The notes below the pieces were generated by a model, which saw only the letters and a list, made by a program, of their open reading frames with translations, did not search any database and was not told the origin of the DNA. From Macrostomum hystrix (Eukaryota; Animalia; Platyhelminthes), in NCBI GenBank assembly GCA_950097015.1, contig CATNEN010000002.1, positions 8,990,001-9,054,000 of the forward strand: a DNA stretch of 64,000 nt, written 5' to 3'. A program made the position numbers and the translations under genes. Positions 16,901 to 63,932 of the stretch are shown one piece after another (position 1 is the first letter of the stretch; each line of letters starts with the position of its first letter).

Positions 16901-19265
16901 GCTGCGGCAGAATCCGGCCATTGGGCGCGGGACTCCCAGACGCTGTTGAAGTGTAGCCAAGGAGACCTGGCGGCAGCGGCAGCGGTGGCTGTTGTGGCGA
17001 AGGCGGCTGCTGGAAGTAGCGATGACTGGCGGTTGCCGCTGCCATGAACGCAGCGTCTGGCACACCGAGACTGGAGGGCAGGCGCGGTGGCTGCAGGGGA
17101 CCGCGAAGGCCGTAGGCAGGGTCCCTATGTGGTGGCGGCGGCGGCGGCGGCGGCAGCGGCTGCCGATATGCGAAGCCGGCCGCCGTAGCGAAATTGCTCG
17201 GAAACGGCGGTCCGACGGAGCTCGCCGCGGCGGCTGCCACAGCGGCGGCTGCAGCGGCGGCGGCTGATCTTTTCACTGCGGCTGTCGAGGCGCTCTCGGC
17301 GGGTCCGGCTGCCATCTGCCTGGCTGTCTTGTGGATTCGCGCTGACCCGGTTGAGGTCCTCGACTGATGCGGCTGCAGCATCGCCGGCTGCGACGGCTGC
17401 TGCCTCAGCTGCTGAAAGTCCTTCTTTGTCAAAGAATCCTCCTTGGACTGCACCGCAGTCTGGTGGTGTCTTGCGGCGTCTCCGCAGGCCTCAGATCGAG
17501 GATGCTTCGCTGATTGGCTCTGCGGTTGCTATGGCAACGGAAGTTGCGAGTAGCGAGTTAGATTTAGCAGCATCGGTAAGCTTTTGTCCAGAAAGTGCTT
17601 AGCGATTTCAGTCTCGGGATGAGGATTCGAGTTTCTGATTGAGGATTCGTGGATTCTAGATAGGGATTTCTGTTTCCAAATAAGGTTTTGAATTTTTAGA
17701 TCGGGATTAAGGGCTCTGGATGGGGATTGAACTTTCTAGGATCAGAATTTCGCTCTGAGCCTCAATAGTGATTACCTGTTTGAAACCGCTAACTGCAGTC
17801 GCAGAGTTTTCACTTACGCCGAACTTTCCGTAGACCGACTTTGAGTTCCGTCCGCCGGGCATGTGGTTCTCGCGCACGGCTGCAATGAACGGATATTATT
17901 TTATGAAGCCTGCCTCGCCTCAGCTGCTCAAAATCCCGTGAAGATTTGCTTCCCGACTCTCACCTTCAACAACCATGCCGGTTTCCAGGCACTTCCTGAA
18001 GCGGCAGAACTGGCAGTTGTTCCGCCGCTGCAGCTGGACGTCGCAGATCCGGTCGAAGGAGCACTCATAAATGCGGCGGTTCTGAACTGTGCGCTTGAAG
18101 AAGCCCTTGCAGCTGCGGGCGGCACAGGAGGGTTGATGGAGCAGGGATCAGGGATTGATGGAGCTGGGATCAGGGATTGATGGAGCTGGGATCAGGGATT
18201 GATGGAGCTGGGATCAGGGATTGATGGAGCTGGGATCAGGGATTGATGGAGCTGGGATCAGCAATGGGTCACAAGCGGCTCTCACCCCTCGCACGTCATA
18301 ACGCCATAGTGCAGGCCGGTGGCGCGGTCCTCGCACACCGCGCACGGCTCCCCTGAAGCCACCGCCGCGGCTGCTACTGCGGCCGACGCGCCAGAAGTCG
18401 AAGCCAGAGAAGCTTCGCCAGCCTCGGTGGAAGCAGCCGAGTCCTTCAGGCTCGCTGCGTCGTCGTTCAGCGTGCTGGCTGTGGACATTGTCTCCACCAG
18501 GGCGTCACCGAGCTCCTCCATGGCTCCGCCGAGTTCGCCGCCGGCGCCTCCGCCGCTGTAGAACCTGACGAAGTTGTTCAGCGACAAACCCGGAGCCTCC
18601 AGCTTCCGCTTGCGGTTCGCGTTGGCGAATTTCTCGTGGAATTTTTTTGTGTAGTACAGCGATGCATCCGAGCTGTCGCCGCTGCTGCCTTCGCCCGATG
18701 CCGCAGCGGCGGCGGAAGCAGCGGCCGCGGCGGCCGCCACAGCAGCCGACTCCGACTGGCGCTGCTCGTCGTTGCTATCCAGCGGCGGCAGCAGCTGCTG
18801 GGAGCAGAGCTTTAGTCCGCAGGTGGCCAGGCGGCAGCTGGAGTTGTCGCGCACGAAGGACACGCCGAACTCGTTGAGGATGCGGTTGAGCAGCTGGCTG
18901 GGGTTGCTCACCTCCGAATCGTCGGAGTTGTCGCTGACGTCGCCGGTGGTCGGCACCTTGTCTGAGTCGTCGGTGCCGCTCTTGGCGTCCGGCTCCTGCT
19001 TGGCTTCCTCCAGGTCGTCTGAGTTGGCAGCGAGGTGCAGCTTCAGCTTCATGTGTTTGAAGGCGCTGCTGCTCCTGCCGCAGCCGCCGCTGCCGCTTCC
19101 GTGGCCGCTACTGCTGCTGCTGTGGCCAGCCCGACTGCCTCCGCCGCCGCCTCCGCTGCTGCTGCTGCTGCTGCTTCCACCGCCGACGCTAGCGGCTTCT
19201 TCGTCACACATGATTTCCTTCGGCGGGCTGCTGGCGGCTTCTGCTCGGAGATTGGATGTTTGCAT
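13901..19265 (-). CDS. NR6A1: Nuclear receptor subfamily 6 (GCNF/HR4-like), 7 coding exons, ~977 aa
   Basis: Exons 19265-18286, 18112-17964, 17879-17818, ~17528-16307 (acceptor uncertain), 15326-15210, 14769-14686 and 14220-13901; phases are consistent and the total is 2934 nt. DBD [86 protein letters not shown] closely matches HR4/GCNF. The last exon RTAAGALEKARPDQQAQLMAALLAS aligns with the GCNF C-terminus. Confidence 0.9.
15360..16262. repeat. 17-bp minisatellite (CATAGAATCTCACTGCT) in nuclear receptor intron
   Basis: About 50 tandem copies between exons at 15326 and 16307. Confidence 0.95.
18128..18262. repeat. 22-bp minisatellite (GGGATTGATGGAGCTGGGATCA) filling the intron inside the first zinc finger
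   Basis: About 6 copies in the 173-bp intron 18113-18285. Confidence 0.9.
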
Positions 19266-24610: not shown

Positions 24611-26092
24611 CCGGAGTCCACTGGTTGGCTTCTACCCGTCAAGTGTCGACTTGAAGAGGCCGGTAGAAGCGAGACCCGCCTCCTGCTGCTGCGCCGCCCG
24701 CACTTGGAAGAGCTGCACTGCAAACTGGGCTGGCTGTTTGACCTGCGGGGCCACTACCTGCTCAAATACCTGGGTGGGTGAGCATGCTTATTGGGGATCT
24801 TCATTTTTGTACGAGCTGTTCGGGGATCTCGATACGAGTATGACATATCGCCGGGTGGGGTAAGTGTGGCGCATGCTTCAACCAAATCGATCCCATTACG
24901 GATCAGGGATTGATGGATCAGATTCGGGATAGCTTCAGAATTCCTGAAGGATCAGATTCGGGATAGCTTCAGAACTCCTGAAGGATCAGATTAAGGATAG
25001 CTTCAGAACTCCTGAAGGATCAGATTAAGGATAGCTTCAGAACTCCTGAAGGATCAGATTAAGGATAGCTTCAGAACTCCTGAAGGATCAGATTAAGGAT
25101 AGCTTCAGAACTCCTGAAGGATCAGATTCGGGATAGCTTCAGAACTCCTGAAGGATCAGATTCGGGATAGCTTCAGAACTCCTGAAGGATCAGATTCGGA
25201 ATAGCTTCAGAACTCCTGAAGGATCAGATTCGGAATAGCTTCAGAACTCCTGAAGGATCAGATGCAGGATAGCTTCAGAACTCCTGAAGGATCAGATTCG
25301 GGATAGCTTCAGAACTCCTGAAGGATCAGGCAAAACACCCCTGAAGTGGCAAGCTCGGCGTCCGCGTCCGCAGACAAATTCGGCGATCTCATCACCTTCT
25401 CGTCGGACGAGGAGTTCCAGCTGGCCCTGGGCAACTTCCGGCCGCCCGAGTTCCGCATTCTTGTCACCCCGGCTGACGAGGCCACCGTCGGCTCCGGGGA
25501 CTGCTTCAATGTGCGGTCAGGCCGCAGTCAGTGGACAGCCACGCGGTCTTTGAGTTCAACGACAGCGACGAAAGACATCCAACCGGCTGCGACGCCGCCG
25601 CCACCGCCCACGGCCGTCATCATCTCGCCGCCAGCTCCGAGCGTTGACAGAGTACCGCAGACTCCCATCAGAGACGCTCCTTCGAAAGCCTCAACAGCCG
25701 AGAGGCCACCAGCTCGGCATCGGGTGAGCCGTCAAGCCGTCGTCACCTCCGAGGTGCCGCTCAGTCCCAGAGAGCGCGGCGCCATCTTCCATCCCGACTA
25801 CCTGCGGCCGCGCACCGCCAACCAGCGGAAAACCGGCGGCAGAGCCGGGTACTCCGTCCAGGCCTCGCTGGCTGGCTATCGGCAGGACCTGGCCGCGGCC
25901 GCGCCGACGCACAGCTCGACAAAGAGCGCCGCCGACTCGAAGTTCGTCCACTTCGGCATCGAGTGCAGCCGATGCTGCGCGGATCCTGTGATTGGCTGGC
26001 GGTTCAAGTGCTCCCTCTGCCCCAACTACAACCTGTGCGAGCCCTGCTTCCACTGCTACTCTCACGGCCACGGCTTCTACCGGCTGCCGTGA
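24566..26092 (+). CDS. PB1 + ZZ zinc-finger protein (p62/SQSTM1-like N-terminal architecture), 2 exons, ~308 aa
   Basis: Exon 24566-24773 (G|gtgggt) joins 25374-26092 (cag|AC) to give HYLLKYLDKFGDLITFSSDEEFQLAL, a PB1 OPCA-type motif. The C-terminal VHFGIECSRCCADPVIGWRFKCSLCPNYNLCEPCFHCYSHGH is a ZZ finger. Confidence 0.85.
24905..25328. repeat. 34-bp minisatellite in the PB1-ZZ intron (GAAGGATCAGATTCGGGATAGCTTCAGAACTCCT)
   Basis: About 12 tandem copies. Confidence 0.95.
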
Positions 26093-27534: not shown

Positions 27535-30500
27535 GTAGAATCGCAGCAATAGCATTAGCTAGAATCGCAGCAAGAACATTAGCTAGAATCGCAGCAAGAG
27601 CATTAGCTAGAACAACAGCAAGAGCATTAGCTAGAATCGCAGCAAGAGCATTAGCTAGAATCGCAGCAAGAGCATTGGCTAGAATCGCAGCAAGAGCATT
27701 AGCTAGAATCGCAGCAAGACCATTAGCTAGAATCGCAGCAAGACCATTAGCTAGAATCGCAGCAAGAGCATTAGCTAGAATCGCAGCAAGACCATTAGCT
27801 AGAATCACAGCAAAAGCATTAGCTAGAATCGCAGCAAGAGCATTAGCTAGAACCGCAGCAAGAGCATTAGCTAGAATCGCAGCAAGAGCATTAGCTAGAA
27901 TCGGAGCAAGAGCATTAGCTAGAATCGCAGCAAGAGCATTAGCTAGAATCGCAGCAAGAGCATTAGCTAGAATCGCAGCAAGAGCATTAGCTAGAATCGG
28001 AGCAAGAGTATTGGCTAGAATCGGAGCAAGAGTATTAGCTAGAATCGCAGCAAGAGCATTAGCTAGAATCGCAGCAAGAGCATTAGCTAGAATCGCAGCA
28101 AGAGCATTAGCTAGAATCGCAGCAAGAGCATTACCTAGAACCGCAGCAAGAGCATTAGCTAGAATCGCAGCAAAAGCATTAGCTAGAATCGCAGCAAGAC
28201 CATTAGCTAGAATCGCAGCAAGACCATTAGCTAGAATCGCAGCAAGAGCATTAGCTAGAATCGCAGCAAGACCATTAGCTATAATCGCAGCAAGAGCATT
28301 AGCTAGAATCGCAGCAAGAGCATTAGCTAGAATCGCAGCAAGAGCATTGGCTAGAATCGCAGCAAGTGCATTAGCTAGAATCGCAGCAAGAGCATTAGCT
28401 AGAATCGCAGCAAGAGCATTAGCTAGAATCGCAGCAAAAGCATTAGCTAGAATAGCAGCAAGAGCATTAGCTAGAATCGCAGCAAGAGCATTGGCTAGAA
28501 TCGCAGCAAGAGCATTAGCTAGAATCGCAGCAAGAGCATTACCTAGAACCGCAGCAAGAGCATTAGCTAGAATCGCAGCAAAAGCATTAGCTAGAATCGC
28601 AGCAAGAGCATTAGCTAGAACCGCAGCAAGAGCATTAGCTAGAATCGCAGCAAGAGCATTAGCTAGAATCGGAGCAAGAGCATTAGCTAGAATCGCAGCA
28701 AGAGCATTAGCTAGAATCGCAGCAAGAGCATTAGCTAGAATCGCAGCAAGAGCATTAGCTAGAATCGCAGCAAGAGCATTGGCTAGAATCGCAGCAAGTG
28801 CATTAGCTAGAATCGCAGCAAGAGCATTAGCTAGAATCGTAGCAAAGCATTAGCTAGAATCGGAGCAAGAGTATTAGCTAGAATCGCAGCAAGAGCATTA
28901 GCTAGAATCGGAGCAAGAGTATTAGCTAGAATCGCAGCAAGAGCATTAGCTAGAATCGGAGCAAGAGTATTAGCTAGAATCGCAGCAAGAGCATTAGCTA
29001 GAATCGGAGCAAGAGCATTAGCTAGAATCGCAGCAAGAGCATTAGCTAGAATCGCAGCAAGAGCATTAGCTAGAATCGCAGCAAGAGCATTAGCTAGAAT
29101 CGCAGCAAGAGCATTGGCTAGAATCGCAGCAAGAGCATTAGCTAGAATCGGGGCAACAGCATTGGCTAGAATCGCAGCAAGAGCATTAGCTAGAATCGCA
29201 GCAAGAGCATTAGCTAGAATCGCAGCAAGACCATTAGCTAGAATCACAGCAAAAGCATTAGCTAGAACCGCAGCAAGAGCATTAGCTAGAATCGCAGCAA
29301 GAGCATTAGCTAGAATCGCAGCAAAAGCATTAGCTAGAATAGCAGCAAGAGCATTAGCTAGAATCGGAGCAACAGCATTGGCTAGAATCGGAGCAAGAGC
29401 ATTAGCTAGAATCGCAGCAAGAGCATTAGCTAGAATCGGAGCAAGAGTATTAGCTAGAATCGCAGCAAGAGCATTAGCTAGAATCGGAGCAAGAGCATTA
29501 GCTAGAATCGGAGCAAGAGTATTGGCTAGAATCGCAGCAAGAGCATTAGCTAGAATCGCAGCAAGAGCATTAGCTAGAATCGCAGCAAGACCATTAGCTA
29601 GAATCACAGCAAAAGCATTAGCTAGAACCGCAGCAAGAGCATTAGCTAGAATCGCAGCAAGAGCATTAGCTAGAATCGCAGCAAAAGCATTAGCTAGAAT
29701 AACAGCAAGAGCATTAGCTAGAATCGGAGCAACAGCATTGGCTAGAATCGGAGCAAGAGCATTAGCTAGAATCGCAGCAAGAGCATTATCTAGAATCGCA
29801 GAAAAAGCATTAGCTAGAATCGCAGCAAGAGCATTAGCTAGAATCGCAGCAAGAGCATTAGCTAGAATCTCAGCAAGAGCATTAGCTAGAATCGGAGCAA
29901 CAGCATTGGCTAGAATCGGAGCAACAGCATTGGCTAGAATCGAAGCAAGAGCATTAGCTAGAATCGGAGCAAGAGCAGTAACTAGAATCGAAGCAAGAGC
30001 ATTAGCTAGAATCGCAGCAAGAGCATTGGCTAGAATCGCAGAAAAAGCATTAGCTAGAATCGCAGAAAGAGCATTAGCTAGAATCGCAGCAAGAGCATTA
30101 GCTAGAATCGCAGCAAGAGCATTAGCTAGAATCGCAGCAAGAGCATTAGCTAGAATCTCAGCAAGAGCATTAGCTAGAATCGGAGCAACAGCATTGGCTA
30201 GAATCGGAGCAACAGCATTGGCTAGAATCGAAGCAAGAGCATTAGCTAGAATCGGAGCAAGAGCAGTAACTAGAATCGAAGCAAGAGCATTAGCTAGAAT
30301 CGCAGCAAGAGCATTGGCTAGAATCGCAGAAAAAGCATTAGCTAGAATCGCAGAAAGAGCATTAGCTAGAATCGTAGCAAAGCATTAGCTAGAATCGGGG
30401 CAACAGCATTGGCTAGAATCGCAGCAAGAGCATTAGCTAGAATCGCAGCAAGAGCATTAGCTAGAATCGCAGCAAGACCATTAGCTAGAATCACAGCAAA

Positions 30501-33500
30501 AGCATTAGCTAGAACCGCAGCAAGAGCATTAGCTAGAATCGCAGCAAGAGCATTAGCTAGAATCGCAGCAAAAGCATTAGCTAGAATCGCAGCAAGAGCA
30601 TTAGCTAGAATCGCAGCAAAAGCATTAGCTAGAATAACAGCAAGAGCATTAGCTAGAATCGGAGCAACAGCATTGGCTAGAATCGAAGCAAGAGCATTAG
30701 CTAGAATCGCAGCAAGAGCATTAGCTAGAATCGCAGCAAGAGCATTAGCTAGAATCGCAGCAAGAGCATTAGCTAGAATCGGAGCAACAGCATTGGCTAG
30801 AATCGGAGCAAGAGCATTAGCTAGAATCGAAGCAAGAGCATTAGCTAGAATCGCAGCAAGGGCATTAGCTAGAATCGCAGCAAGAGCATTAGCTAGAATC
30901 GCAGCAAAAGCATTAGCTAGAATCGGAGCAAGAGCATTAGCTAGAATCGCAGCAAGAGCATTAGCTAGAATCGCAGCAAGAGCATTAGCTAGAATCGCAG
31001 AAAAAGCATTAGCTAGAATCGCAGCAAGAGCATTACCTAGAATAGGGGCAACAGCATTGGCTAGAATCGCAGCAAGAGAATCAGCTAGAATCGGAGCAAG
31101 AGCATTAGCTAGAATCGCAGCAAGAGAATTAGCTAGAATCTCAGCAAGAGCATTAGCTAGAATCGGAGCAACAGCATTGGCTAGAATCGGAGCAACAGCA
31201 TTGGCTAGAATCGAAGCAAGAGCATTAGCTAGAATCGGAGCAAGAGCAGTAACTAGAATCGAAGCAAGAGCATTAGCTAGAATCGCAGCAAGAGCATTGG
31301 CTAGAATCGCAGAAAAAGCATTAGCTAGAATCGCAGAAAGAGCATTAGCTAGAATCGCAGCAAGAGCATTAGCTAGAATCGCAGCAAGAGCATTAGCTAG
31401 AATCGCAGCAAGAGCATTAGCTAGAATCTCAGCAAGAGCATTAGCTAGAATCGGAGCAACAGCATTGGCTAGAATCGGAGCAACAGCATTGGCTAGAATC
31501 GAAGCAAGAGCATTAGCTAGAATCGGAGCAAGAGCAGTAACTAGAATCGAAGCAAGAGCATTAGCTAGAATCGCAGCAAGAGCATTGGCTAGAATCGCAG
31601 AAAAAGCATTAGCTAGAATCGCAGAAAGAGCATTAGCTAGAATCGTAGCAAAGCATTAGCTAGAATCGGGGCAACAGCATTGGCTAGAATCGCAGCAAGA
31701 GCATTAGCTAGAATCGCAGCAAGAGCATTAGCTAGAATCGCAGCAAGACCATTAGCTAGAATCACAGCAAAAGCATTAGCTAGAACCGCAGCAAGAGCAT
31801 TAGCTAGAATCGCAGCAAGAGCATTAGCTAGAATCGCAGCAAAAGCATTAGCTAGAATAACAGCAAGAGCATTAGCTAGAATCGGAGCAACAGCATTGGC
31901 TAGAATCGAAGCAAGAGCATTAGCTAGAATCGCAGCAAGAGCATTAGCTAGAATCGCAGCAAGAGCATTAGCTAGAATCGCAGCAAGAGCATTAGCTAGA
32001 ATCGGAGCAACAGCATTGGCTAGAATCGGAGCAAGAGCATTAGCTAGAATCGAAGCAAGAGCATTAGCTAGAATCGCAGCAAGGGCATTAGCTAGAATCG
32101 CAGCAAGAGCATTAGCTAGAATCGCAGCAAAAGCATTAGCTAGAATCGGAGCAAGAGCATTAGCTAGAATCGCAGCAAGAGCATTAGCTAGAATCGCAGC
32201 AAGAGCATTAGCTAGAATCGCAGAAAAAGCATTAGCTAGAATCGCAGCAAGAGCATTACCTAGAATAGGGGCAACAGCATTGGCTAGAATCGCAGCAAGA
32301 GAATCAGCTAGAATCGGAGCAAGAGCATTAGCTAGAATCGCAGCAAGAGAATTAGCTAGAATCTCAGCAAGAGCATTAGCTAGAATCGGAGCAACAGCAT
32401 TGGCTAGAATCGGAGCAACAGCATTGGCTAGAATCGAAGCAAGAGCATTAGCTAGAATCGGAGCAAGAGCAGTAACTAGAATCGAAGCAAGAGCATTAGC
32501 TAGAATCGCAGCAAGAGCATTGGCTAGAATCGCAGAAAAAGCATTAGCTAGAATCGCAGAAAGAGCATTAGCTAGAATCGCAGCAAGAGCATTAGCTAGA
32601 ATCGCAGCAAGAGCATTAGCTAGAATCGCAGCAAGAGCATTAGCTAGAATCTCAGCAAGAGCATTAGCTAGAATCGGAGCAACAGCATTGGCTAGAATCG
32701 GAGCAACAGCATTGGCTAGAATCGAAGCAAGAGCATTAGCTAGAATCGGAGCAAGAGCAGTAACTAGAATCGAAGCAAGAGCATTAGCTAGAATCGCAGC
32801 AAGAGCATTGGCTAGAATCGCAGAAAAAGCATTAGCTAGAATCGCAGAAAGAGCATTAGCTAGAATCGTAGCAAAGCATTAGCTAGAATCGGGGCAACAG
32901 CATTGGCTAGAATCGCAGCAAGAGCATTAGCTAGAATCGCAGCAAGAGCATTAGCTAGAATCGCAGCAAGACCATTAGCTAGAATCACAGCAAAAGCATT
33001 AGCTAGAACCGCAGCAAGAGCATTAGCTAGAATCGCAGCAAGAGCATTAGCTAGAATCGCAGCAAAAGCATTAGCTAGAATAACAGCAAGAGCATTAGCT
33101 AGAATCGGAGCAACAGCATTGGCTAGAATCGAAGCAAGAGCATTAGCTAGAATCGCAGCAAGAGCATTAGCTAGAATCGCAGCAAGAGCATTAGCTAGAA
33201 TCGCAGCAAGAGCATTAGCTAGAATCGGAGCAACAGCATTGGCTAGAATCGGAGCAAGAGCATTAGCTAGAATCGGAGCAACAGCATTGGCTAGAATCGG
33301 AGCAAGAGCATTAGCTAGAATCGAAGCAAGAGCATTAGCTAGAATCGCAGCAAGGGCATTAGCTAGAATCGCAGCAAGAGCATTAGCTAGAATCGCAGCA
33401 AGTGCATTAGCTAGAATCGCAGCAAGAGCATTAGCTAGAATCGCAGCAAGTGCATTAGCTAGAATCGCAGCAAGAGCATTAGCTAGAATCGCAGCAAGAG

Positions 33501-33750
33501 CATTAGCTAGAATCGCAGCAAGAGCATTAGCTAGAATCGAAGCAAGAGCATTAGCTAGAATCGCAGCAAGGGCATTAGCTAGAATCGCAGCAAGAGCATT
33601 AGCTAGAATCGCAGCAAGAGCATTAGCTAGAATCGCAGCAAGTGCATTAGCTAGAATCGCAGCAAGAGCATTAGCTAGAATCGCAGCAAGAGCATTAGCT
33701 AGAATCGCAGCAAGAGCATTAGCTAGAATCGCAGCAAAGCTTTAGCTAGG
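27535..33750. repeat. 6.2-kb 24-bp satellite (GCATTAGCTAGAATCGCAGCAAGA) with higher-order repeats
   Basis: About 260 monomers. A 23-bp deletion variant ATCGTAGCAAAGC occurs at 28836, 30371, 31642 and 32865. Confidence 0.97.
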
Positions 33751-36874: not shown

Positions 36875-39800
36875 TCACTCTCCCATCCATCCATCCAGTG
36901 TCTCACTCTCCCATCCATCCAGTGTCTCACTCTCCCATCCATCCAGTGTCTCACTCTCCCATCCATCCAGTGTCTCACTCTCCCATCCATCCAGTGTCTC
37001 ACTCTCCCATCCATCCAGTGTCTCACTCTCCCATCCATCCATCCAGTGTCTCACTCTCCCATCCATCCAGTGTCTCACTCTCCCATCCATCCAGTGTCTC
37101 ACTCTCCCATCCATCCAGTGTCTCACTCTCCCATCCATCCAGTGTCTCACTCTCCCATCCATCCAGTGTCTCACTCTCCCATCCATCCAGTGTCTCACTC
37201 TCCCACCCATCCATCCAGTGTCTCACTCTCCCATCCATCCAGTGTCTCACTCTCCCATCCATCCAGTGTCTCACTCTCCCACCCATCCATCCAGTGTCTC
37301 ACTCTCCCATCCATCCAGTGTCTCACTCTCCCATCCATCCAGTGTCTCACTCTCCCATCCATCCATCCAGTGTCTCACTCTCCCATCCATCCAGTGTCTC
37401 ACTCTCCCACCCATCCATCCAGTGTCTCACTCTCCCATCCATCCAGTGTCTCACTCTCCCATCCATCCAGTGTCTCACTCTCCCATCCATCCAGTGTCTC
37501 ACTCTCCCATCCATCCATCCAGTGTCTCACTCTCCCATCCATCCATCCAGTGTCTCACTCTCCCATCCATCCAGTGTCTCACTCTCCCATCCATCCATCC
37601 AGTGTCTCACTCTCCCATCCATCCATCCAGTGTCTCACTCTCCCATCCATCCATCCAGTGTCTCACTCTCCCATCCATCCATCCAGTGTCTCACTCTCCC
37701 ATCCATCCAGTGTCTCACTCTCCCATCCATCCAGTGTCTCACTCTCCCATCCATCCAGTGTCTCACTCTCCCATCCATCCAGTGTCTCACTCTCCCATCC
37801 ATCCATCCAGTGTCTCACTCTCCCATCCATCCAGTGTCTCACTCTCCCATCCATCCATCCAGTGTCTCACTCTCCCATCCATCCAGTGTCTCACTCTCCC
37901 ATCCATCCAGTGTCTCACTCTCCCATCCATCCATCCAGTGTCTCACTCTCCCATCCATCCATCCAGTGTCTCACTCTCCCATCCATCCATCCAGTGTCTC
38001 ACTCTCCCATCCATCCAGTGTCTCACTCTCCCATCCATCCATCCAGTGTCTCACTCTCCCATCCATCCAGTGTCTCACTCTCCCATCCATCCATCCAGTG
38101 TCTCACTCTCCCATCCATCCAGTGTCTCACTCTCCCATCCATCCAGTGTCTCACTCTCCCATCCATCCAGTGTCTCACTCTCCCATCCATCCAGTGTCTC
38201 ACTCTCCCATCCATCCATCCAGTGTCTCACTCTCCCATCCATCCAGTGTCTCACTCTCCCATCCATCCAGTGTCTCACTCTCCCATCCATCCAGTGTCTC
38301 ACTCTCCCATCCATCCAGTGTCTCACTCTCCCATCCATCCAGTGTCTCACTCTCCCATCCATCCAGTGTCTCACTCTCCCATCCATCCATCCAGTGTCTC
38401 ACTCTCCCATCCATCCAGTGTCTCACTCTCCCATCCATCCAGTGTCTCACTCACCCATCCATCCAGTGTCTCACTCTCCCATCCATCCAGTGTCTCACTC
38501 TCCCATCCATCCAGTGTCTCACTCTCCCATCCATCCATCCAGTGTCTCACTCTCCCATCCATCCAGTGTCTCACTCTCCCATCCATCCAGTGTCTCACTC
38601 TCCCATCCATCCAGTGTCTCACTCTCCCATCCATCCAGTGTCTCACTCTCCCATCCATCCAGTGTCTCACTCTCCCATCCATCCATCCAGTGTCTCACTC
38701 TCCCATCCATCCAGTGTCTCACTCTCCCATCCATCCATCCAGTGTCTCACTCTCCCATCCATCCAGTGTCTCACTCTCCCATCCATCCAGTGTCTCACTC
38801 TCCCATCCATCCATCCAGTGTCTCACTCTCCCATCCATCCATCCAGTGTCTCACTCTCCCATCCATCCATCCAGTGTCTCACTCTCCCATCCATCCAGTG
38901 TCTCACTCTCCCATCCATCCATCCAGTGTCTCACTCTCCCATCCATCCAGTGTCTCACTCTCCCATCCATCCATCCAGTGTCTCACTCTCCCATCCATCC
39001 AGTGTCTCACTCTCCCATCCATCCAGTGTCTCACTCTCCCATCCATCCATCCAGTGTCTCACTCTCCCATCCATCCATCCAGTGTCTCACTCTCCCATCC
39101 ATCCATCCAGTGTCTCACTCTCCCATCCATCCAGTGTCTCACTCTCCCATCCATCCATCCAGTGTCTCACTCTCCCATCCATCCATCCAGTGTCTCACTC
39201 TCCCATCCATCCAGTGTCTCACTCTCCCATCCATCCAGTGTCTCACTCTCCCATCCATCCAGTGTCTCACTCTCCCATCCATCCAGTGTCTCACTCTCCC
39301 ATCCATCCAGTGTCTCACTCTCCCATCCATCCAGTGTCTCACTCTCCCATCCATCCAGTGTCTCACTCTCCCATCCATCCAGTGTCTCACTCTCCCATCC
39401 ATCCAGTGTCTCACTCTCCCATCCATCCAGTGTCTCACTCTCCCATCCATCCAGTGTCTCACTCTCCCATCCATCCAGTGTCTCACTCTCCCATCCATCC
39501 AGTGTCTCACTCTCCCATCCATCCAGTGTCTCACTCTCCCATCTATTTAGTGTCTCACTCTCCCATCCATCCAGTGTCTCACTCTCCCATCTATTTAGTG
39601 TCTCACTCTCCCATCCATCCAGTGTCTCACTCTCCCATCCATCCAGTGTCTCACTCTCCCATCCATCCAGTGTCTCACTCTCCCATCCATCCAGTGTCTC
39701 ACTCCCATCCATCCAGTGTCTCACTCTCCCATCCATCCATCCAGTGTCTCACTCTCCCATCCATCCAGTGTCTCACTCTCCCATCCATCCATCCAGTGTC

Positions 39801-42800
39801 TCACTCTCCCATCCATCCAGTGTCTCACTCTCCCATCCATCCATCCAGTGTCTCACTCTCCCATCCATCCAGTGTCTCACTCTCCCATCCATCCAGTGTC
39901 TCACTCTCCCATCCATCCATCCAGTGTCTCACTCTCCCATCCATCCATCCAGTGTCTCACTCTCCCATCCATCCATCCAGTGTCTCACTCTCCCATCCAT
40001 CCAGTGTCTCACTCTCCCATCCATCCATCCAGTGTCTCACTCTCCCATCCATCCAGTGTCTCACTCTCCCATCCATCCATCCAGTGTCTCACTCTCCCAT
40101 CCATCCAGTGTCTCACTCTCCCATCCATCCAGTGTCTCACTCTCCCATCCATCCAGTGTCTCACTCTCCCATCCATCCAGTGTCTCACTCTCCCATCCAT
40201 CCAGTGTCTCACTCTCCCATCCATCCAGTGTCTCACTCTCCCATCTATTTAGTGTCTCACTCTCCCATCCATCCAGTGTCTCACTCTCCCATCTATTTAG
40301 TGTCTCACTCTCCCATCCATCCAGTGTCTCACTCTCCCATCTATTTAGTGTCTCACTCTCCCATCCATCCAGTGTCTCACTCTCCCATCCATCCAGTGTC
40401 TCACTCTCCCATCCATCCAGTGTCTCACTCTCCCATCCATCCAGTGTCTCACTCTCCCATCCATCCAGTGTCTCACTCTCCCATCCATCCAGTGTCTCAC
40501 TCTCCCATCCATCCAGTGTCTCACTCTCCCATCCATCCAGTGTCTCACTCTCCCATCCATCCAGTGTCTCACTCTCCCATCCATCCAGTGTCTCACTCTC
40601 CCATCCATCCAGTGTCTCACTCTCCCATCCATCCAGTGTCTCACTCTCCCATCCATCCAGTGTCTCACTCTCCCATCCATCCAGTGTCTCACTCTCCCAT
40701 CCATCCAGTGTCTCACTCTCCCATCCATCCAGTGTCTCACTCTCCCATCTATTTAGTGTCTCACTCTCCCATCCATCCAGTGTCTCACTCTCCCATCTAT
40801 TTAGTGTCTCACTCTCCCATCCATCCAGTGTCTCACTCTCCCATCTATTTAGTGTCTCACTCTCCCATCTATCCAGTGTCTCACTCTCCCATCCATCCAG
40901 TGTCTCACTCTCCCATCCATCCAGTGTCTCACTCTCCCATCCATCCAGTGTCTCACTCCCATCCATCCAGTGTCTCACTCTCCCATCCATCCATCCAGTG
41001 TCTCACTCTCCCATCCATCCAGTGTCTCACTCTCCCATCCATCCATCCAGTGTCTCACTCTCCCATCCATCCAGTGTCTCACTCTCCCATCCATCCATCC
41101 AGTGTCTCACTCTCCCATCCATCCAGTGTCTCACTCTCCCATCCATCCAGTGTCTCACTCTCCCATCCATCCATCCAGTGTCTCACTCTCCCATCCATCC
41201 ATCCAGTGTCTCACTCTCCCATCCATCCATCCAGTGTCTCACTCTCCCATCCATCCAGTGTCTCACTCTCCCATCCATCCATCCAGTGTCTCACTCTCCC
41301 ATCCATCCAGTGTCTCACTCTCCCATCCATCCATCCAGTGTCTCACTCTCCCATCCATCCAGTGTCTCACTCTCCCATCCATCCAGTGTCTCACTCTCCC
41401 ATCCATCCAGTGTCTCACTCTCCCATCCATCCAGTGTCTCACTCTCCCATCCATCCAGTGTCTCACTCTCCCATCCATCCAGTGTCTCACTCTCCCATCT
41501 ATTTAGTGTCTCACTCTCCCATCCATCCAGTGTCTCACTCTCCCATCTATTTAGTGTCTCACTCTCCCATCCATCCAGTGTCTCACTCTCCCATCCATCC
41601 AGTGTCTCACTCTCCCATCCATCCAGTGTCTCACTCTCCCATCCATCCAGTGTCTCACTCTCCCATCCATCCAGTGTCTCACTCTCCCATCCATCCAGTG
41701 TCTCACTCTCCCATCCATCCAGTGTCTCACTCTCCCATCCATCCAGTGTCTCACTCTCCCATCCATCCAGTGTCTCACTCTCCCATCCATCCAGTGTCTC
41801 ACTCTCCCATCTATTTAGTGTCTCACTCTCCCATCCATCCAGTGTCTCACTCTCCCATCCATCCAGTGTCTCACTCTCCCATCCATCCAGTGTCTCACTC
41901 TCCCATCCATCCATCCAGTGTCTCACTCTCCCATCCATCCATCCAGTGTCTCACTCTCCCATCCATCCATCCAGTGTCTCACTCTCCCATCCATCCAGTG
42001 TCTCACTCTCCCATCCATCCATCCAGTGTCTCACTCTCCCATCCATCCAGTGTCTCACTCTCCCATCCATCCATCCAGTGTCTCACTCTCCCATCCATCC
42101 AGTGTCTCACTCTCCCATCCATCCAGTGTCTCACTCTCCCATCCATCCAGTGTCTCACTCTCCCATCCATCCATCCAGTGTCTCACTCTCCCATCCATCC
42201 AGTGTCTCACTCTCCCATCCATCCATCCAGTGTCTCACTCTCCCATCCATCCAGTGTCTCACTCTCCCATCCATCCAGTGTCTCACTCTCCCATCCATCC
42301 ATCCAGTGTCTCACTCTCCCATCCATCCATCCAGTGTCTCACTCTCCCATCCATCCATCCAGTGTCTCACTCTCCCATCCATCCAGTGTCTCACTCTCCC
42401 ATCCATCCATCCAGTGTCTCACTCTCCCATCCATCCAGTGTCTCACTCTCCCATCCATCCATCCAGTGTCTCACTCTCCCATCCATCCAGTGTCTCACTC
42501 TCCCATCCATCCAGTGTCTCACTCTCCCATCCATCCAGTGTCTCACTCTCCCATCCATCCATCCAGTGTCTCACTCTCCCATCCATCCATCCAGTGTCTC
42601 ACTCTCCCATCCATCCATCCAGTGTCTCACTCTCCCATCCATCCAGTGTCTCACTCTCCCATCCATCCATCCAGTGTCTCACTCTCCCATCCATCCAGTG
42701 TCTCACTCTCCCATCCATCCAGTGTCTCACTCTCCCATCCATCCAGTGTCTCACTCTCCCATCCATCCAGTGTCTCACTCTCCCATCCATCCAGTGTCTC

Positions 42801-43085
42801 ACTCTCCCATCCATCCAGTGTCTCACTCTCCCATCCATCCAGTGTCTCACTCTCCCATCCATCCAGTGTCTCACTCTCCCATCCATCCAGTGTCTCACTC
42901 TCCCATCCATCCAGTGTCTCACTCTCCCATCCATCCAGTGTCTCACTCTCCCATCCATCCAGTGTCTCACTCTCCCATCCATCCAGTGTCTCACTCCCAT
43001 CCATCCAGTGTCTCACTCTCCCATCCATCCAGTGTCTCACTCCCATCTATTTAGTGTCTCACTCTCATCTATTTAGTGTCTCACA
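36875..43085. repeat. 6.2-kb 24/28-bp satellite (AGTGTCTCACTCTCCCATCCATCC[ATCC])
   Basis: About 245 monomers; variants with ATCTATTTAG and 22-bp deletions. Source of the 2162-aa and 1952-aa pseudo-ORFs. Confidence 0.97.
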
Positions 43086-58127: not shown

Positions 58128-61100
58128 TTAATACCTCGAAGACCTCAGCAGCTGGAGCAAACCAGCAGCGTCTTCTAGTTCGCCGCTCCACCTGACAGTC
58201 TTGACAAACCGGTGATTTCTGCAGTGCTCCTCCAAGCCTCGTCCGAACTCCTCCAGGATGTCGTCGACCTGCTGCGGGCTGATCAGTCCGGCGAAGCCCC
58301 AGTTCAGCTGCTCGCGCAGGTAAGAAAACTGGCCGGGAATTTCGAAGGCCAGTCTTGAATGCTGCCAGTGCCAGACTTGATAATTGTAGGGCCTGCCATT
58401 GGATCCCATGAAGCTTTCGTTATTTTTTTGGGCTTCGAGGTCGGCCAGGCCCTGCTCCAGAGCGCTCTGCTCAGGGAAGCGATTGCTTGCAGGCAGGACC
58501 ATGAAGTACGGCTTGTCGAACGGCAAAGCTGCCAGCTGACTTTCGTCAGCAGAGTCGTCCCGCATGTCTGCAAAAGTAAGAGTTCGTTTCGTTTCCTACA
58601 CAACGCACGTTTTTCCGTTGATTTGCATCTCAATCAGCCACATGACTCGTACAGTAGAACTTCTGCGACTAATCGAGGCCCAACCTTAGCGTGAAGTCGT
58701 TTGACTGTCGAATCCATCCTATAAAATTTAATTCATGGAACTCCGCATCATTGCAGTTACTTCGCTTTCAAATCGATCGCAAAAGAAAATTTTTTTTCCT
58801 TCACTTGGGATAATCTTCGATGTGCGATTCGATCAGGTTTCCATTAAACCAGAAAGAAACTTACATTCCTCCATCTTGTCGACAAAGCCGCAGCAAATGT
58901 TCGCGGTCAGGACACGGGCCATTGACATCAGCGGAAAAACATCCTTAACTTCGAGGCAGTGGACCTCTGCAAGACCTGAAATTTAGTCACAGCAAATTTG
59001 AATGGAGAGTGATAAATGACAAGATTCTAAACAATTTGTCTAGAGTAAGAGAGCGCAGGTGTTTATAAATGGTGAACAAAATAACAAATATTTACGACAA
59101 TCAGTTACTTCAACTTACGAAGGCCATCGATGACGTCAGCAAGAGTGCGCAGCTGCTGTCCGAAGGGCAGCCTGCCTTCAACGTTGTCGCCAGTCAGAGT
59201 TCGCACGCCTGCCACGCAGCAGTAGGGCAGGCATCTCAGCCGATCCGGCAGGACGTCGTGGACAGCTTCAATGCCAACTCCGAAGTCTCCCACAATGATG
59301 ACGGAAACGCAGCACTCGCCAGTCATGCTCATCTGAAATGAAAGCACAAGATATTGATGCATTTTTATCTGGCATTGAGAAGTTGACAGGTGCATACAGA
59401 ACCCAGAAGATACTCAACCAGTGGCACAGCCGCATCTTTTGTGGTGCATTCAAATGCAGCGTACGGCTCTATGGACAGGAGGCGCTGGCACATCCCCTAA
59501 GCTCTATCTACACCAGCTAGTTCTCGTTCCCATTTCACAGCTGCAGGGCGAAATATCTTGTTTCGAACTCCTGAATTTTCGGTTAGAAGTTCGGCGATCT
59601 AGACTGAAGTCTCTCAACGTGAATTTGCGTAGCCGAGCCAGAATGGGGTGTGGGCGCTGGTCATCTGATTGGCTGGTGCGGGTGTCCACCCAGTGCTTGC
59701 ACCGCTTTGCCAAACCCTTACAGTTAGCATTGAACAGACTCACCTTTTCAGCAGCAGCGGTGACTTTATTATTCTCGGTGCCTCTCAAGTCCTCCGGACT
59801 CAGCACAAGAAGAATTCTCCGGAAGTGTTGCAAATGCTCAAATTGCAAATCGTTAACTGCCGAAAGTTCGTACCTGCCAGGTAGTCTGGAATCCAGTGCC
59901 ATCTTAAGTGCGTCCGTCTGATTGCTAAGGGAGCTGCTCATTGCTACGAGCACATGCGGATCTGCGCATTCCATAGAAAACTTTGACCCAAACGCCATTC
60001 CACCTAAACTCGCATTCTTCGCCTGGGGTTGGGCAACAAAGCTCCTGCTTTCATTGTTCATGCACATTTTCAGACTCTCTTTGCTGGCCACCTCAACCAG
60101 CGCCACCTTTGAGCTCTGCTCAGTGCTGATGTGGCTCTCTGGATTGCTGAAAAGCAGCCTTGGAAAGTAAGGATGGTAGATGATGATTTTCAGCGCCTCC
60201 TTGAACTGACTGAACATTTCCTCTCGAACTTCAGCAATGTCCAGTGCTTGCGATGCCTCAACGCTCATGTCTCGCATGGCGAAGATCGGGGAGGCCCAGT
60301 CGGCGAAGATGACAGCGTGCGTCTCTCCTGAAGGTGTTCTTTGATCCAGCTCCATCAAGTAGATGAACACTTTTCTTTGATAGCCAAGGCCATCGAAATA
60401 CAAAATCCCAGTTTTCACGCAACCAGGGAACAGGACGTCCGGACTGACGTCTTGACCCAGTTTGTCCGGAACAAGAACGAAATACTTTTTGAGCACCAGA
60501 ATCTTTTCAGGTAGCAGTTGAATTCCCACGCTACTCAGCTTGCTCTCACTGAGATGATCGCCAACATAGAGAGCTTCTGTGATCCGAGTCTCCAGGTTGG
60601 GCACAATGAGACGCAGGAAGGTTGTGGCGAAGTTCCAGGCGAAAGCTTCTCCGGTGCTCGCATTGCTCTTTTGCACTGCAATGATTTTTTACTTGATTTG
60701 AAGTTTCTTGGTCGATAACCACCCATTTTTCAGCTAGGTTGAGGTTGTGTAAATACTAGCTGCTAGTATTTATGTACGTAATTACGCTCGTAACAGTGAC
60801 TCTCACCTTGAGGTTGCATGAGACCAAGGATCACTGTTCTTGCCAAGTGTCCGAGCTGGCTGAGATCATCCTCTCCCGTCAGCTTGACCACAGACTGAAA
60901 CTGGTCTCGAATTCTCGGGTGCTGCAGAAGGTCTTGCGTGGTCAATTCCCCTGAATCAGCTCGGGAAGTCCAGTTGTCCACAAGATGCAGCGGTACGTGT
61001 TTATTGGCCATGCGCTGAAATATATGGCAACGATTTTCATGTGGAGAAAGCACAGCGTATTAAGAATGTGCCAGAAAAGCTGTCGAATTTAGCTTTGAAA

Positions 61101-61755
61101 GTCAACAGGAAAGCAGTTAAAATCATTTAAAGCTTGTTAAGACTTAAAGCCCGTCCTCTGCTGTTGTAGATGGTATACTCGCATTAAAAAATTTTGCAGT
61201 TATAAGTGAAGTTACCTGCTTCATCGTCAGCAGCAGGAGTGGCCGAATGTACACCATTGGTTTCTTGTTGAACATAAGCACAATGGCATCAGAGCTGTAC
61301 ACCAGCTGCACGATGCTTGTCCAGTCCTCCAGGTTGTCATATATTCTGACCACAACTCTGGCCTCACCCTGTGCGTCCCTTTCGGTGAGAAATCCTTTCA
61401 GGGCTGTCGTCATGTCCTCCTGTAGAGCTCTGCTGGCGTCGTTAGCTTTTCCGACCACAAGCAAAGCCACCGTGACGTGATGCGTCTCATCTATCATAAA
61501 ATGCGGTTGTGCTTGCATGCATGTGTTATTTTATCCTAGGGTATATGTACACGCTGAAAAGGGTGCACAGGTGAAATCGAAGGTCATGCTGTCACATAAT
61601 TTTTAACGATTTTGAGTTTGAGTAGAACTAGTTTCAGCTTTCATTTTGAGTAAAACCTGTTTAACAAAATTACTAGCTCTCATCTTACCGAGCGAAGCAC
61701 GGAACAAAACCCCGCTGGCTTCTCGCATGAAGTAGTCAGATGTTTCGAGTGCCAT
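58128..61755 (-). CDS. TIR-STING-TIR-STING tandem-domain protein, 7 exons, 748 aa, no transmembrane segment
   Basis: Exons 61755-61689, 61490-61216, 61014-60807, 60675-59744, 59332-59119, 58975-58865 and 58567-58128; all GT-AG, phase-matched, 2247 nt. STING1: AFAWNFATTFLRLIVPNLETRI / YFVLVP / GYQRKVF / ADWASP. STING2: ARVLTANICCGFV / YFMVLP / GRPYNY / AFEIPG / AGLISPQQ...EEFGRGLEE. TIR2: HVLVAMS...RRILLVLSPEDL...VSVII...VLPDRLRCL. TIR1 is more divergent (IVQLVYSSDAIVLMF...HVPLHLV). Confidence 0.82.
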
Positions 61756-63501: not shown

Positions 63502-63932
63502 TTAATACCTCGAAGACCTCAGTAGCTGGAGCAAACCAGCAGCGCCTTCTTGTTCATAGCTCCACCTGACAGTCTTGACAAACCGGTGATTTCTGCAGTG
63601 CTCCACCAAGCCTCGTCCGAACTCCTCCAGGATGTCGTCGACCTGCTGCGGGCTGATCAGTCCGGCGAAGCCCCAGTTCAGCTGCTCGCGCAGGTAAGAA
63701 AACTGGCCGGGAATTTCGAAGGCCAGTCTTGAATGCTGCCAGTGCCAGACTTGATAATTGTAGGGCCTGCCATTGGATCCCATGAAGCTTTCGTTATTTT
63801 TTTGGGCTCCGTGGTCGGCCAGGCCCTGCTCCAGAGCGCTCTGCTCAGGGAAGCGATTGCTTGCAGGCAGGACAATGAAGTACGGCTTGTCGAACGGCAA
63901 AGCACTCCCTTGACTGGACTCGTTCTGCATGT
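63502..63932 (-). CDS. Terminal exon (STING ligand-binding domain, C-terminal part) of a tandem paralog; rest of gene lies beyond the window end
   Basis: Acceptor ttgtag|AC in the same phase as 58567. 63502-63903 is near-identical to 58128-58529, and the 3' flank is also duplicated. Confidence 0.85.

What the first reader, a model, noticed from the sequence alone, without database searches (positions are those of the whole stretch)
58128..61755. Soluble TIR-STING-TIR-STING protein: a doubled TIR-STING module in one animal polypeptide
Seen: seven phase-matched exons assemble into a 748-aa ORF with two STING-like ligand-binding domains. STING1 AFAWNFATTFLRLIVP keeps the register of human GLAWSYYIGYLRLILP. 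STING2 has RPY and xxE motifs at the positions of human RVY (R238/Y240) and VLEYATP. Splicing AAG|GTGAGT (59744) to cag|ATG (59332) completes a SARM1-like TIR pattern (RRILLVLSPEDL...VSVII...VLPDRL versus RNFVLVLSPGAL...IVPII...VLPEDM), which independently supports the exon model. Established: single TIR-STING fusions are bacterial CBASS effectors (cyclic-dinucleotide-gated NADases) and also occur in some invertebrates such as oyster; canonical animal STING is a TM protein. Inference: an internally duplicated, TM-less TIR-STING repeat is an architecture I do not recall being described. It may be a cytosolic nucleotide-second-messenger receptor in an animal innate immune pathway.
Basis: partly seen in the sequence, partly recalled or inferred. 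Interest (0 to 1): 0.95.

Follow-up and report, generated by a model that had tools for sequence, protein, structure and literature searches.

The report
Flatworm soluble double-STING receptor gene
This is a real, intact seven-exon animal gene for a membrane-free immune-sensor protein with two STING ligand-binding domains and at least one TIR-like domain. It belongs to a very diverged Macrostomum-type flatworm family, and the domain layout has already been noted in oysters, so it is interesting but not unprecedented.

Summary
The exon model holds. Seven GT-AG exons on the minus strand (61755 to 58128) join into a 748-aa ORF. All six introns match Macrostomum lignano homologues in position and phase.

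- **STING1 (aa 184-385)** is a STING ligand-binding domain (LBD) by sequence: Pfam E 3.4e-5, and hhalign 97%.
- **STING2 (aa 566-748)** is not detected by HMMER. The equivalent part of homologue P0007 folds as a STING LBD (Z 13 to human STING 154-337). R661, Y663 and E678 sit where human R238, Y240 and E260 do.
- **The middle domain** is TIR-like by fold only. The top whole-module match is oyster TIR-STING 6wt7, and TIR domains score Z 8-10.
- **The N-terminal domain** is a generic alpha/beta fold, so its TIR identity is unproven.
- **No transmembrane (TM) segment** was found.

The two halves show no detectable sequence similarity to each other.

The claim that the layout is undescribed fails. 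[quoted passage not shown]

My reading is a cytosolic cyclic-dinucleotide receptor whose unequal LBDs may pair. Ligand binding, pairing and NADase activity are untested.

The parts
61689..61755 (-). Exon 1 (aa 1-22 plus 1 nt): start codon and short N-terminal leader
   Evidence: ATG at 61755 and a donor CG|gtaag in phase 1. An intron of the same phase lies before the aligned Asp codon in the M. lignano P0002 gene. Which upstream exon is actually used has no transcript support.
61216..61490 (-). Exon 2 (aa 23-114): first part of the N-terminal alpha/beta domain ('TIR1')
   Evidence: Acceptor tag|AT and donor CAG|gtaac in phase 0. The phase-0 intron is at the aligned position in the P0002 gene. 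It aligns with the N-termini of P0002, P0003 and P0007. There is no TIR Pfam hit.
60807..61014 (-). Exon 3 (aa 115-183 plus 1 nt): second part of the N-terminal alpha/beta domain
   Evidence: GT-AG borders. A phase-1 intron lies at the same aligned codon in the P0002 gene. The fold of the homologous P0002:1-155 is a generic three-layer alpha/beta. The best match is Z 6.0, and TIRs score 5.1-5.6.
60071..60675 (-). STING1 ligand-binding domain (aa 184-385), in the 5' part of exon 4
   Evidence: Pfam STING_LBD E 3.4e-5, 23.7 bits, below the cut-off of 27. All 32 PDB phmmer hits are STING. hhalign of the family against canonical LBDs gives probability 97%, E 6e-11.
59960..60070 (-). Linker (aa 386-422) inside exon 4
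   Evidence: Poorly conserved in the family alignment. Low pLDDT in the homologue model.
59744..59959 (-). Middle TIR-like domain ('TIR2'), N-terminal half (aa 423-494), at the end of exon 4
   Evidence: It is continuous in frame with STING1. The homologous P0007 375-531 matches TIR domains at Z 8-10, and 6wt7 TIR-STING across 371-712. The candidate Glu E493 is the codon before the last of the exon.
59119..59332 (-). Exon 5 (aa 495-565 plus 1 nt): C-terminal half of the middle TIR-like domain
   Evidence: cag|ATG acceptor in phase 0. The same position and phase occur in the P0007 gene (aa 449/450). The alignment to P0007 and P0003 is colinear.
58865..58975 (-). Exon 6 (aa 566-602 plus 1 nt): first helix of STING2
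   Evidence: Phase-1 introns on both sides match the P0007 gene (521.33 and 557.33). The motif LxSMxxxxxANxxxGF is conserved in all family members.
58128..58567 (-). Exon 7 (aa 603-748 and the TAA stop): body of STING2
   Evidence: hhalign puts GRPY on RxY and AFEIP on EYATP. The homologous P0007 532-712 matches human STING 151-337 at Z 13.1, rmsd 3.5, 162 residues.
63505..63900 (-). Last exon of the next paralogue upstream (the rest lies beyond the window)
   Evidence: tblastn gives about 95% aa identity to exon 7 over the last 130 residues. Over the 121 aligned codons (120 residues plus the stop) there are 6 non-synonymous and 1 synonymous differences. Identity falls off sharply on both sides.

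Best explanation
The locus is an intact gene of a flatworm of the Macrostomum type. It encodes a soluble 748-aa STING-family receptor with this order of domains: N-terminal alpha/beta domain, STING LBD 1, linker, TIR-like domain, STING LBD 2.

**Shown here**
- The gene structure.
- The STING nature of both LBDs.
- The lack of a membrane anchor.
- Membership of a tandemly expanded, fast-diverging flatworm family.

**Inferred**
- The protein senses a cyclic (di)nucleotide second messenger in the cytosol.
- Its two unequal LBDs together build the binding site that two identical chains build in canonical STING. Pairing within one chain is the most economical reading.
- STING2 would supply the conserved Arg/aromatic/Glu triad (R661, Y663, E678). 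STING1 would supply the conserved helix-1 aromatic (W197, F203) and a basic residue (R284/K285).
- Ligand-driven rearrangement or oligomerisation is passed on through the TIR-like domain, as in oyster and bacterial TIR-STING. The output could be scaffolding or NAD+ cleavage.
For: **Gene model**
- Seven in-phase GT-AG exons.
- STING1, the linker and half of the middle domain lie in one exon.
- One 566-residue BLASTP alignment runs from model aa 187 to 729 against P0007, E 9e-55.
- All six introns are conserved in position and phase.

**STING1**
-.

**STING2**
- The fold of homologue residues 532-712 matches human STING at Z 13, covering 154-337. It also matches coral, oyster, Drosophila and bacterial STINGs at Z 9-12.
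- R661, aromatic 663, E678 and P680 are invariant or conservative in 8 of 8 sequences.

**TIR-like output domain**
- The best Foldseek hit of the whole model is oyster TIR-STING 6wt7 (E 2e-8, 372 columns), followed by bacterial TIR-STING filaments.
- VIA aligns P0007 371-712 to 6wt7 residues 23-357. It also aligns 375-531 to Cat1, RPS4, TRIF, SIGIRR, MyD88 and SEFIR domains at Z 8-10.

**No TM segment**
- The highest 19-residue hydropathy is 1.68, in a strand that carries Asp and Glu. A canonical STING control has four windows of 1.5-1.95.

**Immune-type evolution**
- Tandem paralogues occur here and in M. lignano.
- Between the paralogue exons there are 6 non-synonymous changes and 1 synonymous change.
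Against: - There is no transcript evidence, and exon 1 is only one plausible choice.
- The fold evidence for STING2 and the TIR-like domain comes from a 28%-identical homologue. That model has low overall confidence (mean pLDDT 50) and is 70-83 only over residues 379-712.
- I could not fold the spliced protein of the window, and I could not inspect domain packing. Pairing of the two LBDs is therefore pure inference.
- STING1 has lost canonical contacts. The position of R232 is Gly. E260 is Asp here and Gly in M. lignano. Y240 is Phe here and Pro or Thr in M. lignano.
- TIR matches are interleaved with CheY receivers (Z 8.8), flavodoxin (8.2) and GTPases (8.0).
- No TIR or SEFIR profile hit exists.
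- The candidate catalytic Glu (E493) is Thr in P0003.
- The P0002 subtype lacks the middle domain altogether, so that domain is not essential to the family.
Confidence: 0.6

Rival explanations
1. The protein is the same, but with conventional pairing. Each LBD dimerises with its own kind on a second chain (STING1 with STING1, STING2 with STING2). This gives two symmetric pockets per dimer or a daisy-chained polymer, rather than an intramolecular pseudo-dimer.
For: All solved STINGs, including oyster TIR-STING 6wt7, are homodimers (established knowledge; matches). Each LBD keeps a long first helix, which is the dimer interface.
Against: The two LBDs keep different, complementary subsets of contact residues across the family. 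That is unexpected if each had to form a complete symmetric pocket alone. In STING1 of M. lignano the position of E260 is Gly and the position of Y240 is Pro or Thr.
Confidence: 0.2
2. One LBD, most likely STING1, or the whole protein is a degenerate non-signalling form. It would act as a decoy, sponge or regulator of another STING pathway component, or be a gene drifting towards loss.
For: The family is extremely diverged. Pfam finds nothing in the full-length M. lignano members. An HMMER scan of 1.84 billion representative proteins gave only five hits. Paralogue differences are mostly amino-acid changing, which also fits relaxed constraint.
Against: All seven exons are open, and all six introns are kept across species. 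The key STING2 residues are invariant and the first-helix motifs of both LBDs are conserved. This argues for purifying selection on both domains.
Confidence: 0.12
3. It is a gene-model artefact: two neighbouring genes, or a gene plus a pseudogene fragment, wrongly joined.
For: There is no RNA evidence. The family is tandemly arrayed, which invites merged predictions. The double-STING hit from Paramuricea (P0004) is a partial model that may be such a merger.
Against: The STING1 to middle-domain link lies inside a single uninterrupted exon. Junctions 4/5, 5/6 and 6/7 fall inside domains, not between them. They are conserved in position and phase in M. lignano. There is no stop codon or frame problem, and only one terminal stop.
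Confidence: 0.05
4. The non-STING domains are not TIRs but another flavodoxin-like module, for example receiver-like. In that case the protein is a double STING with unrelated accessory domains and is not a TIR-STING.
For: No TIR or SEFIR sequence signal was found. The N-terminal domain has a best Z of 6.0 to a CARF domain, with TIRs at 5.1-5.6 among many Rossmann-like folds. For the middle domain, receiver, flavodoxin and GTPase folds score within 1-2 Z units of the TIRs.
Against: For the middle domain most of the top matches are TIR or SEFIR. The two-domain unit superposes on oyster and bacterial TIR-STING in the same order and size. One M. lignano member is named a SEFIR-domain protein by UniRef.
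Confidence: 0.25

Closest known systems
Oyster (Crassostrea gigas) TIR-STING, PDB 6WT6 and 6WT7
   Same: It is a soluble animal STING with a TIR domain directly N-terminal to the LBD and no TM helices. It is the best structural match of the homologue model (E 2e-8; residues 371-712 onto 23-357). It comes from a lophotrochozoan with an expanded STING repertoire.
   Different: The solved oyster protein has one TIR and one LBD, and both are recognisable by Pfam-level sequence searches. Here there are two LBDs. The second LBD and the TIR-like domains escape sequence profiles.
[quoted passage not shown]
   Same: The stated domain content is the same (2 x TIR-type, 2 x STING, no TM), again as one of several STING paralogues.
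   Different: It is known only as an annotation-level remark. I could not retrieve these proteins. Whether the domain order, the asymmetry of the LBDs or the origin of the duplication are shared is therefore untested.
Macrostomum lignano uncharacterised proteins (PAA63807.1, PAA82216.1, PAA82218.1; UniRef A0A1I8HHQ4, A0A267G8B1)
   Same: They are true homologues, colinear over 540-650 residues (E 1e-27 to 1e-54). They have identical intron positions and phases and are tandemly arrayed.
   Different: Identity is only 25-39%. One subtype (P0002, P0009, P0010) lacks the middle TIR-like domain, and P0003 has an extra N-terminal alpha/beta domain. None is characterised.
Bacterial TIR-STING CBASS effectors (SfSTING 7UN8, 9LMQ)
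   Same: The TIR then STING order is the same, and they give significant Foldseek matches over both domains. They supply the working model of ligand-induced filament formation activating the TIR.
   Different: They are homodimeric single-module proteins with a compact LBD that binds c-di-GMP and a proven NADase Glu. Here the LBDs are of the metazoan type and no NADase signature could be shown.
Canonical metazoan TM-STING (human, Nematostella, coral)
   Same: The LBD fold and the first-helix motif are shared.
   Different: Canonical STING has four TM helices and one LBD, and it signals from ER and Golgi membranes. This protein has no TM segment and has two LBDs.

Membership tests
STING ligand-binding domain family (Pfam PF15009), domain 1 | Significant match to the STING_LBD profile, or to canonical LBDs, over most of the domain | tested here: met
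   Pfam E 3.4e-5 but 23.7 bits, below the gathering score of 27. A local LBD HMM gives 24.6 bits over aa 190-349. Profile-profile probability is 97%, E 6e-11, over 143 columns. All PDB hits are STING.
STING ligand-binding domain family, domain 2 | STING LBD fold covering the whole domain | tested here: met
   It is met only through homologue P0007, whose residues 532-712 match human STING 151-337 at Z 13.1, rmsd 3.5. Sequence profiles alone fail or are weak (hhalign probability 21%). The window's own spliced sequence was not folded.
STING ligand-binding domain family | Cyclic-dinucleotide contact residues (human Y167, R238, Y240, E260, T263) | tested here: inconclusive
   STING2 has R661, Y663 and E678 conserved in 8 of 8 sequences, but the position of T263 is variable. 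STING1 has F203 (for Y167) and R284/K285 conserved, while the positions of E260 and Y240 are not conserved in the family. Neither domain has the full set.
STING ligand-binding domain family | Binding of a cyclic dinucleotide, and dimeric pocket formation | not testable with these tools
   This needs recombinant protein or a multimer or full-length structure prediction with coordinates.
Metazoan/bacterial TIR-STING fusion | TIR-fold domain immediately N-terminal to a STING LBD in the same chain | tested here: inconclusive
   Middle domain: the top whole-module hit is 6wt7, and TIR or SEFIR domains score Z 8-10. Receiver, flavodoxin and GTPase folds score Z 8-8.8 in the same list. N-terminal domain: the best Z is 6.0, and the match is not specific.
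Metazoan/bacterial TIR-STING fusion | Match to TIR sequence profiles (Pfam TIR, TIR_2 or SEFIR) | tested here: not met
   No hit for the exon pieces at E<=1. No hit for nine full-length family members at E<=10. Family profiles give no hit for the middle domain and no TIR hit for the N-terminal domain against PDB sequences. The window's middle domain could only be tested in two pieces.
Metazoan/bacterial TIR-STING fusion | Catalytic Glu of NADase TIRs | tested here: inconclusive
   E493 lies in the helix after strand C and is conserved in the P0007 group, but it is Thr in P0003. No residue-level structural alignment was available. The N-terminal domain of the window has no Glu in that stretch.
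Soluble (TM-less) STING | Absence of transmembrane helices and of room for upstream TM exons | tested here: met
   Hydropathy. The neighbouring paralogue ends 1.75 kb upstream of the start codon.

The most novel reading that the evidence does not exclude
The two unequal LBDs of one chain fold back on each other into a single-chain STING pseudo-heterodimer with one intrinsically asymmetric pocket. STING2 gives the Arg/aromatic/Glu triad, and STING1 gives the helix-1 aromatic and a basic residue. Such a pocket could be tuned to an asymmetric or non-canonical nucleotide signal. This would be a form of STING not yet characterised in any organism. It would sit in a phylum whose planarian model is reported to lack STING and cGAS (PMC13563047).
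Probability: 0.3. Interest if true: 0.75.

Novelty: new member of a known kind. Interest (0 to 1): 0.45.

Why it matters
Most animal genomes encode a single membrane-bound STING (88% in the survey read). Soluble TIR-STINGs are rare, and the role of their TIR domain is unknown.

A conserved flatworm family with two very unequal LBDs in one chain offers a natural test. It could show whether STING can work as a single-chain pseudo-dimer, and what a TIR-like domain does downstream of an animal STING.

It also shows that STING persists in macrostomid flatworms, in a form so diverged that routine Pfam annotation misses most of it. That matters for claims that flatworms lack the pathway.

The finding does not establish a new architecture. 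Oysters have been reported to carry the same domain content.

Tried and rejected
**Sequence searches**
1. Pfam on each exon found only STING1; there was no TIR and no STING2.
2. Pfam at E<=10 on nine M. lignano homologues found almost nothing.
3. Family profiles of both alpha/beta domains against PDB sequences gave no TIR.
4. A local HMM of canonical LBDs against the spliced protein found STING1 only.
5. hhalign of STING2 against STING1, and of TIR1 against TIR2, gave no signal. An internal duplication cannot be shown by sequence.

**Attempts to retrieve oyster double TIR-STING proteins**
   - P0004 returned only canonical TM-STINGs.
   - Alignments A1 and A5 returned only P0001.
   - The comparison with oyster therefore rests on the literature alone.
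7. Paramuricea P0004, with two STING stretches, is a partial model. All its relatives are single TM-STINGs, so I do not count it as an independent double STING.

**Alternative gene models**
8. I considered an alternative start at ATG 61518, reading through the intron-1 acceptor (MQAQPHFMID...). I rejected it in favour of a spliced exon 1, because M. lignano P0002 has a phase-1 intron at exactly this codon.
9. The apparent intron-less alignment of the upstream paralogue across exons 6-7 is a gapped chance extension, not evidence for the junction.

**Not done**
Full report
**1. The observation**

The exons are 61755-61689, 61490-61216, 61014-60807, 60675-59744, 59332-59119, 58975-58865 and 58567-58128. 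Every intron starts with GT and ends with AG. The phases fit, and the joined CDS of 2,247 nt reads as 748 codons plus TAA.

Exon 4 is a single 932-nt exon. Its 310 in-frame codons run from the first STING domain, through a linker, into the first half of the middle domain. The central claim is that STING1 is physically fused to what follows, and this does not depend on any predicted splice.

**2. Independent support for the splices**

An HMMER scan of 1.84 billion representative proteins with exon 4 gave only five hits. The best three are from the flatworm Macrostomum lignano.

- The spliced model aligns in one 566-residue BLASTP segment (aa 187-729) to P0007, P0008 and P0001 (E about 1e-54).
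- It aligns from aa 75 to 729 to P0003.
- It aligns in two segments (aa 22-380 and 575-697) to P0002 and P0010.
- The multiple alignment is continuous across every exon junction.

I fetched the two M. lignano loci and mapped their introns.

| Window intron | M. lignano gene | Position and phase |
|---|---|---|
| 1-3 | P0002 | Same aligned codons; phases 1, 0, 1 |
| 4 | P0007 | aa 449/450, phase 0 |
| 5 | P0007 | aa 521.33, phase 1 |
| 6 | P0007 | aa 557.33, phase 1 |

These correspond exactly to the window's junctions at aa 494/495, 565/566 and 602/603. The doubted 59744>59332 junction is therefore a conserved intron. No transcript data were available, and the choice of exon 1 remains the least certain part.

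**3. STING1**

- Exon 4 hits Pfam STING_LBD at E 3.4e-5. The score of 23.7 bits is below the curated 27.
- All 32 PDB sequence hits are STINGs, with the AFAWNFATTFLRLIVP helix aligned to GLAWSYYIGYLRLILP.
- A profile of the flatworm family against 26 canonical LBDs gives hhalign probability 97%, E 6e-11.

This domain is a diverged but clear STING LBD.

**4. STING2**

Pfam and a local canonical-LBD HMM do not see it. hhalign is weak (probability 21%, P 1e-3).

I could not submit the spliced protein itself. I therefore folded the colinear homologue P0007, using a family alignment that includes the window's exons.

- Overall confidence is low (mean pLDDT 50), but residues 379-712 reach 70-83.
- Residues 532-712 superpose on human STING 151-337 with Z 13.1, rmsd 3.5 A and 162 residues.
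- They also superpose on coral, oyster, choanoflagellate, Drosophila and bacterial STINGs at Z 9-12.
- R661, the aromatic at 663, E678 and P680 are invariant or conservative in all eight family sequences.

STING2 is a STING LBD by fold.

**5. The 'TIR' domains**

There is no sequence-profile support.

- Pfam gives no TIR, TIR_2 or SEFIR hit for the exon pieces.
- It gives none for nine full-length homologues at E<=10.
- Family profiles give no hit for the middle domain and no TIR hit for the N-terminal domain among PDB sequences.

*Middle domain.* By structure, the best Foldseek hit of the P0007 model is the oyster TIR-STING 6wt7 (E 1.9e-8, 372 columns), followed by bacterial TIR-STING complexes. 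The wide VIA search aligns 371-712 to 6wt7 residues 23-357. For the middle domain alone (375-531) it lists:

| Match | Z |
|---|---|
| Cat1 | 9.8 |
| RPS4 TIR | 9.3 |
| TRIF TIR | 8.8 |
| AtTIR | 8.7 |
| IL-1RAcPb TIR | 8.6 |
| SIGIRR TIR | 8.6 |
| Prokaryotic SEFIR | 8.4 |
| PdTIR | 8.3 |
| MyD88 TIR | 8.3 |

These are interleaved with a CheY-type receiver (8.8), flavodoxin (8.2) and GTPases (about 8). I read the middle domain as TIR-like, but not proven.

*N-terminal domain.* I folded it from P0002:1-155. It gave pLDDT 58.6 and only generic alpha/beta matches. The best is Z 6.0 to a CARF domain, and TIRs score 5.1-5.6. Its identity is open.

*Catalytic residue.* A Glu (E493) lies in the helix after strand C of the middle domain and is shared with the P0007 group, but it is Thr in P0003. 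The SARM1-style NADase inference is therefore not supported by anything beyond resemblance.

*Internal duplication.* The two halves of the protein show no detectable similarity to each other. An internal duplication is possible, but it is ancient or obscured.

**6. No membrane anchor**

The most hydrophobic 19-residue window scores 1.68 and contains Asp and Glu. A canonical STING control has four windows of 1.5-1.95. The preceding paralogue ends only 1.75 kb upstream, which leaves little room for missing TM exons.

**7. Family context**

- The last exon of a second paralogue lies at 63505-63900. It differs from exon 7 by six non-synonymous changes and one synonymous change, and its high identity stops abruptly on both sides.
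- Earlier notes of this scan mention further TIR-STING genes beyond the window.
- In M. lignano, P0002 and P0009 are adjacent, and P0003 is on the same contig.
- The P0002 subtype lacks the middle domain.

**8. How it probably works**

Canonical STING binds its ligand between two identical LBDs. Here the two LBDs of one chain keep complementary subsets of the contact positions.

- STING2 keeps the equivalents of R238, Y240 and E260 without exception.
- STING1 keeps W197, F203 (the Y167 position) and a basic residue.
- In the family, STING1 has lost the E260 and Y240 equivalents.

The simplest reading is a cytosolic nucleotide receptor in which the two LBDs pair, within or between chains, with output through the TIR-like domain as in TIR-STINGs. 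Only the folds and residues are shown. Pairing, ligand binding and output are inference.

**9. Comparison and novelty**

- TIR-STING fusions in oysters are established, with structures 6WT6 and 6WT7.
- The M. lignano homologues are already public, and some are automatically named STING or SEFIR-domain proteins.
- The architecture is therefore not new.

Three things are worth noting.

- The family is so diverged that standard annotation misses three of its four domains.
- It exists in flatworms, although the planarian model is reported to lack STING and cGAS (PMC13563047).
- No double-LBD STING has been characterised, as far as the papers I could search show.

I could not retrieve the oyster double proteins for a direct comparison.

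**10. Verdict**

This is a real gene, and a real double STING without a TM anchor. One domain is TIR-like, and one alpha/beta domain is unassigned. It is a new member, in a new phylum, of a known but uncharacterised kind. Interest is moderate.

Noticed in passing
window 63505-63900 (-): This is the last exon of a tandem paralogue. Over the 121 aligned codons (120 residues plus the stop) it differs from exon 7 by 6 non-synonymous changes and 1 synonymous change. Near-identity stops about 30 nt past the stop codon and about 30-60 nt upstream of aa 629. That looks like a short gene-conversion tract or very recent partial duplication.
   Followed up: partly
window 27536-33749 and 36887-43084: These are two very large 24-bp minisatellite arrays, of 259 and 248 copies with 92-93% matches. 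They explain the extreme GC and AT skew and the spurious ORFs of up to 2,162 aa there.
   Followed up: partly
window 18285-19265 (-) and 25346-26089 (+): These are open frames with a C4 nuclear-receptor zinc finger (E 2e-6) and a ZZ zinc finger (E 4e-9). They are probably exons of unrelated neighbouring genes.
   Followed up: no
L001 10001-25298 (M. lignano NIVC01000486.1): Two 96%-identical family members (P0002, P0009) lie head to tail about 5.7 kb apart. Both lack the middle TIR-like domain, so the order is alpha/beta domain, STING1, short linker, STING2. A third member (P0003) on the same contig has an extra N-terminal alpha/beta domain.
   Followed up: partly
P0004 (Paramuricea clavata CAB4035226.1): This is an octocoral 'partial' protein with two STING_LBD stretches. 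All its close relatives are ordinary single TM-STINGs, so it may be a merged prediction of tandem genes rather than a true double STING.
   Followed up: no
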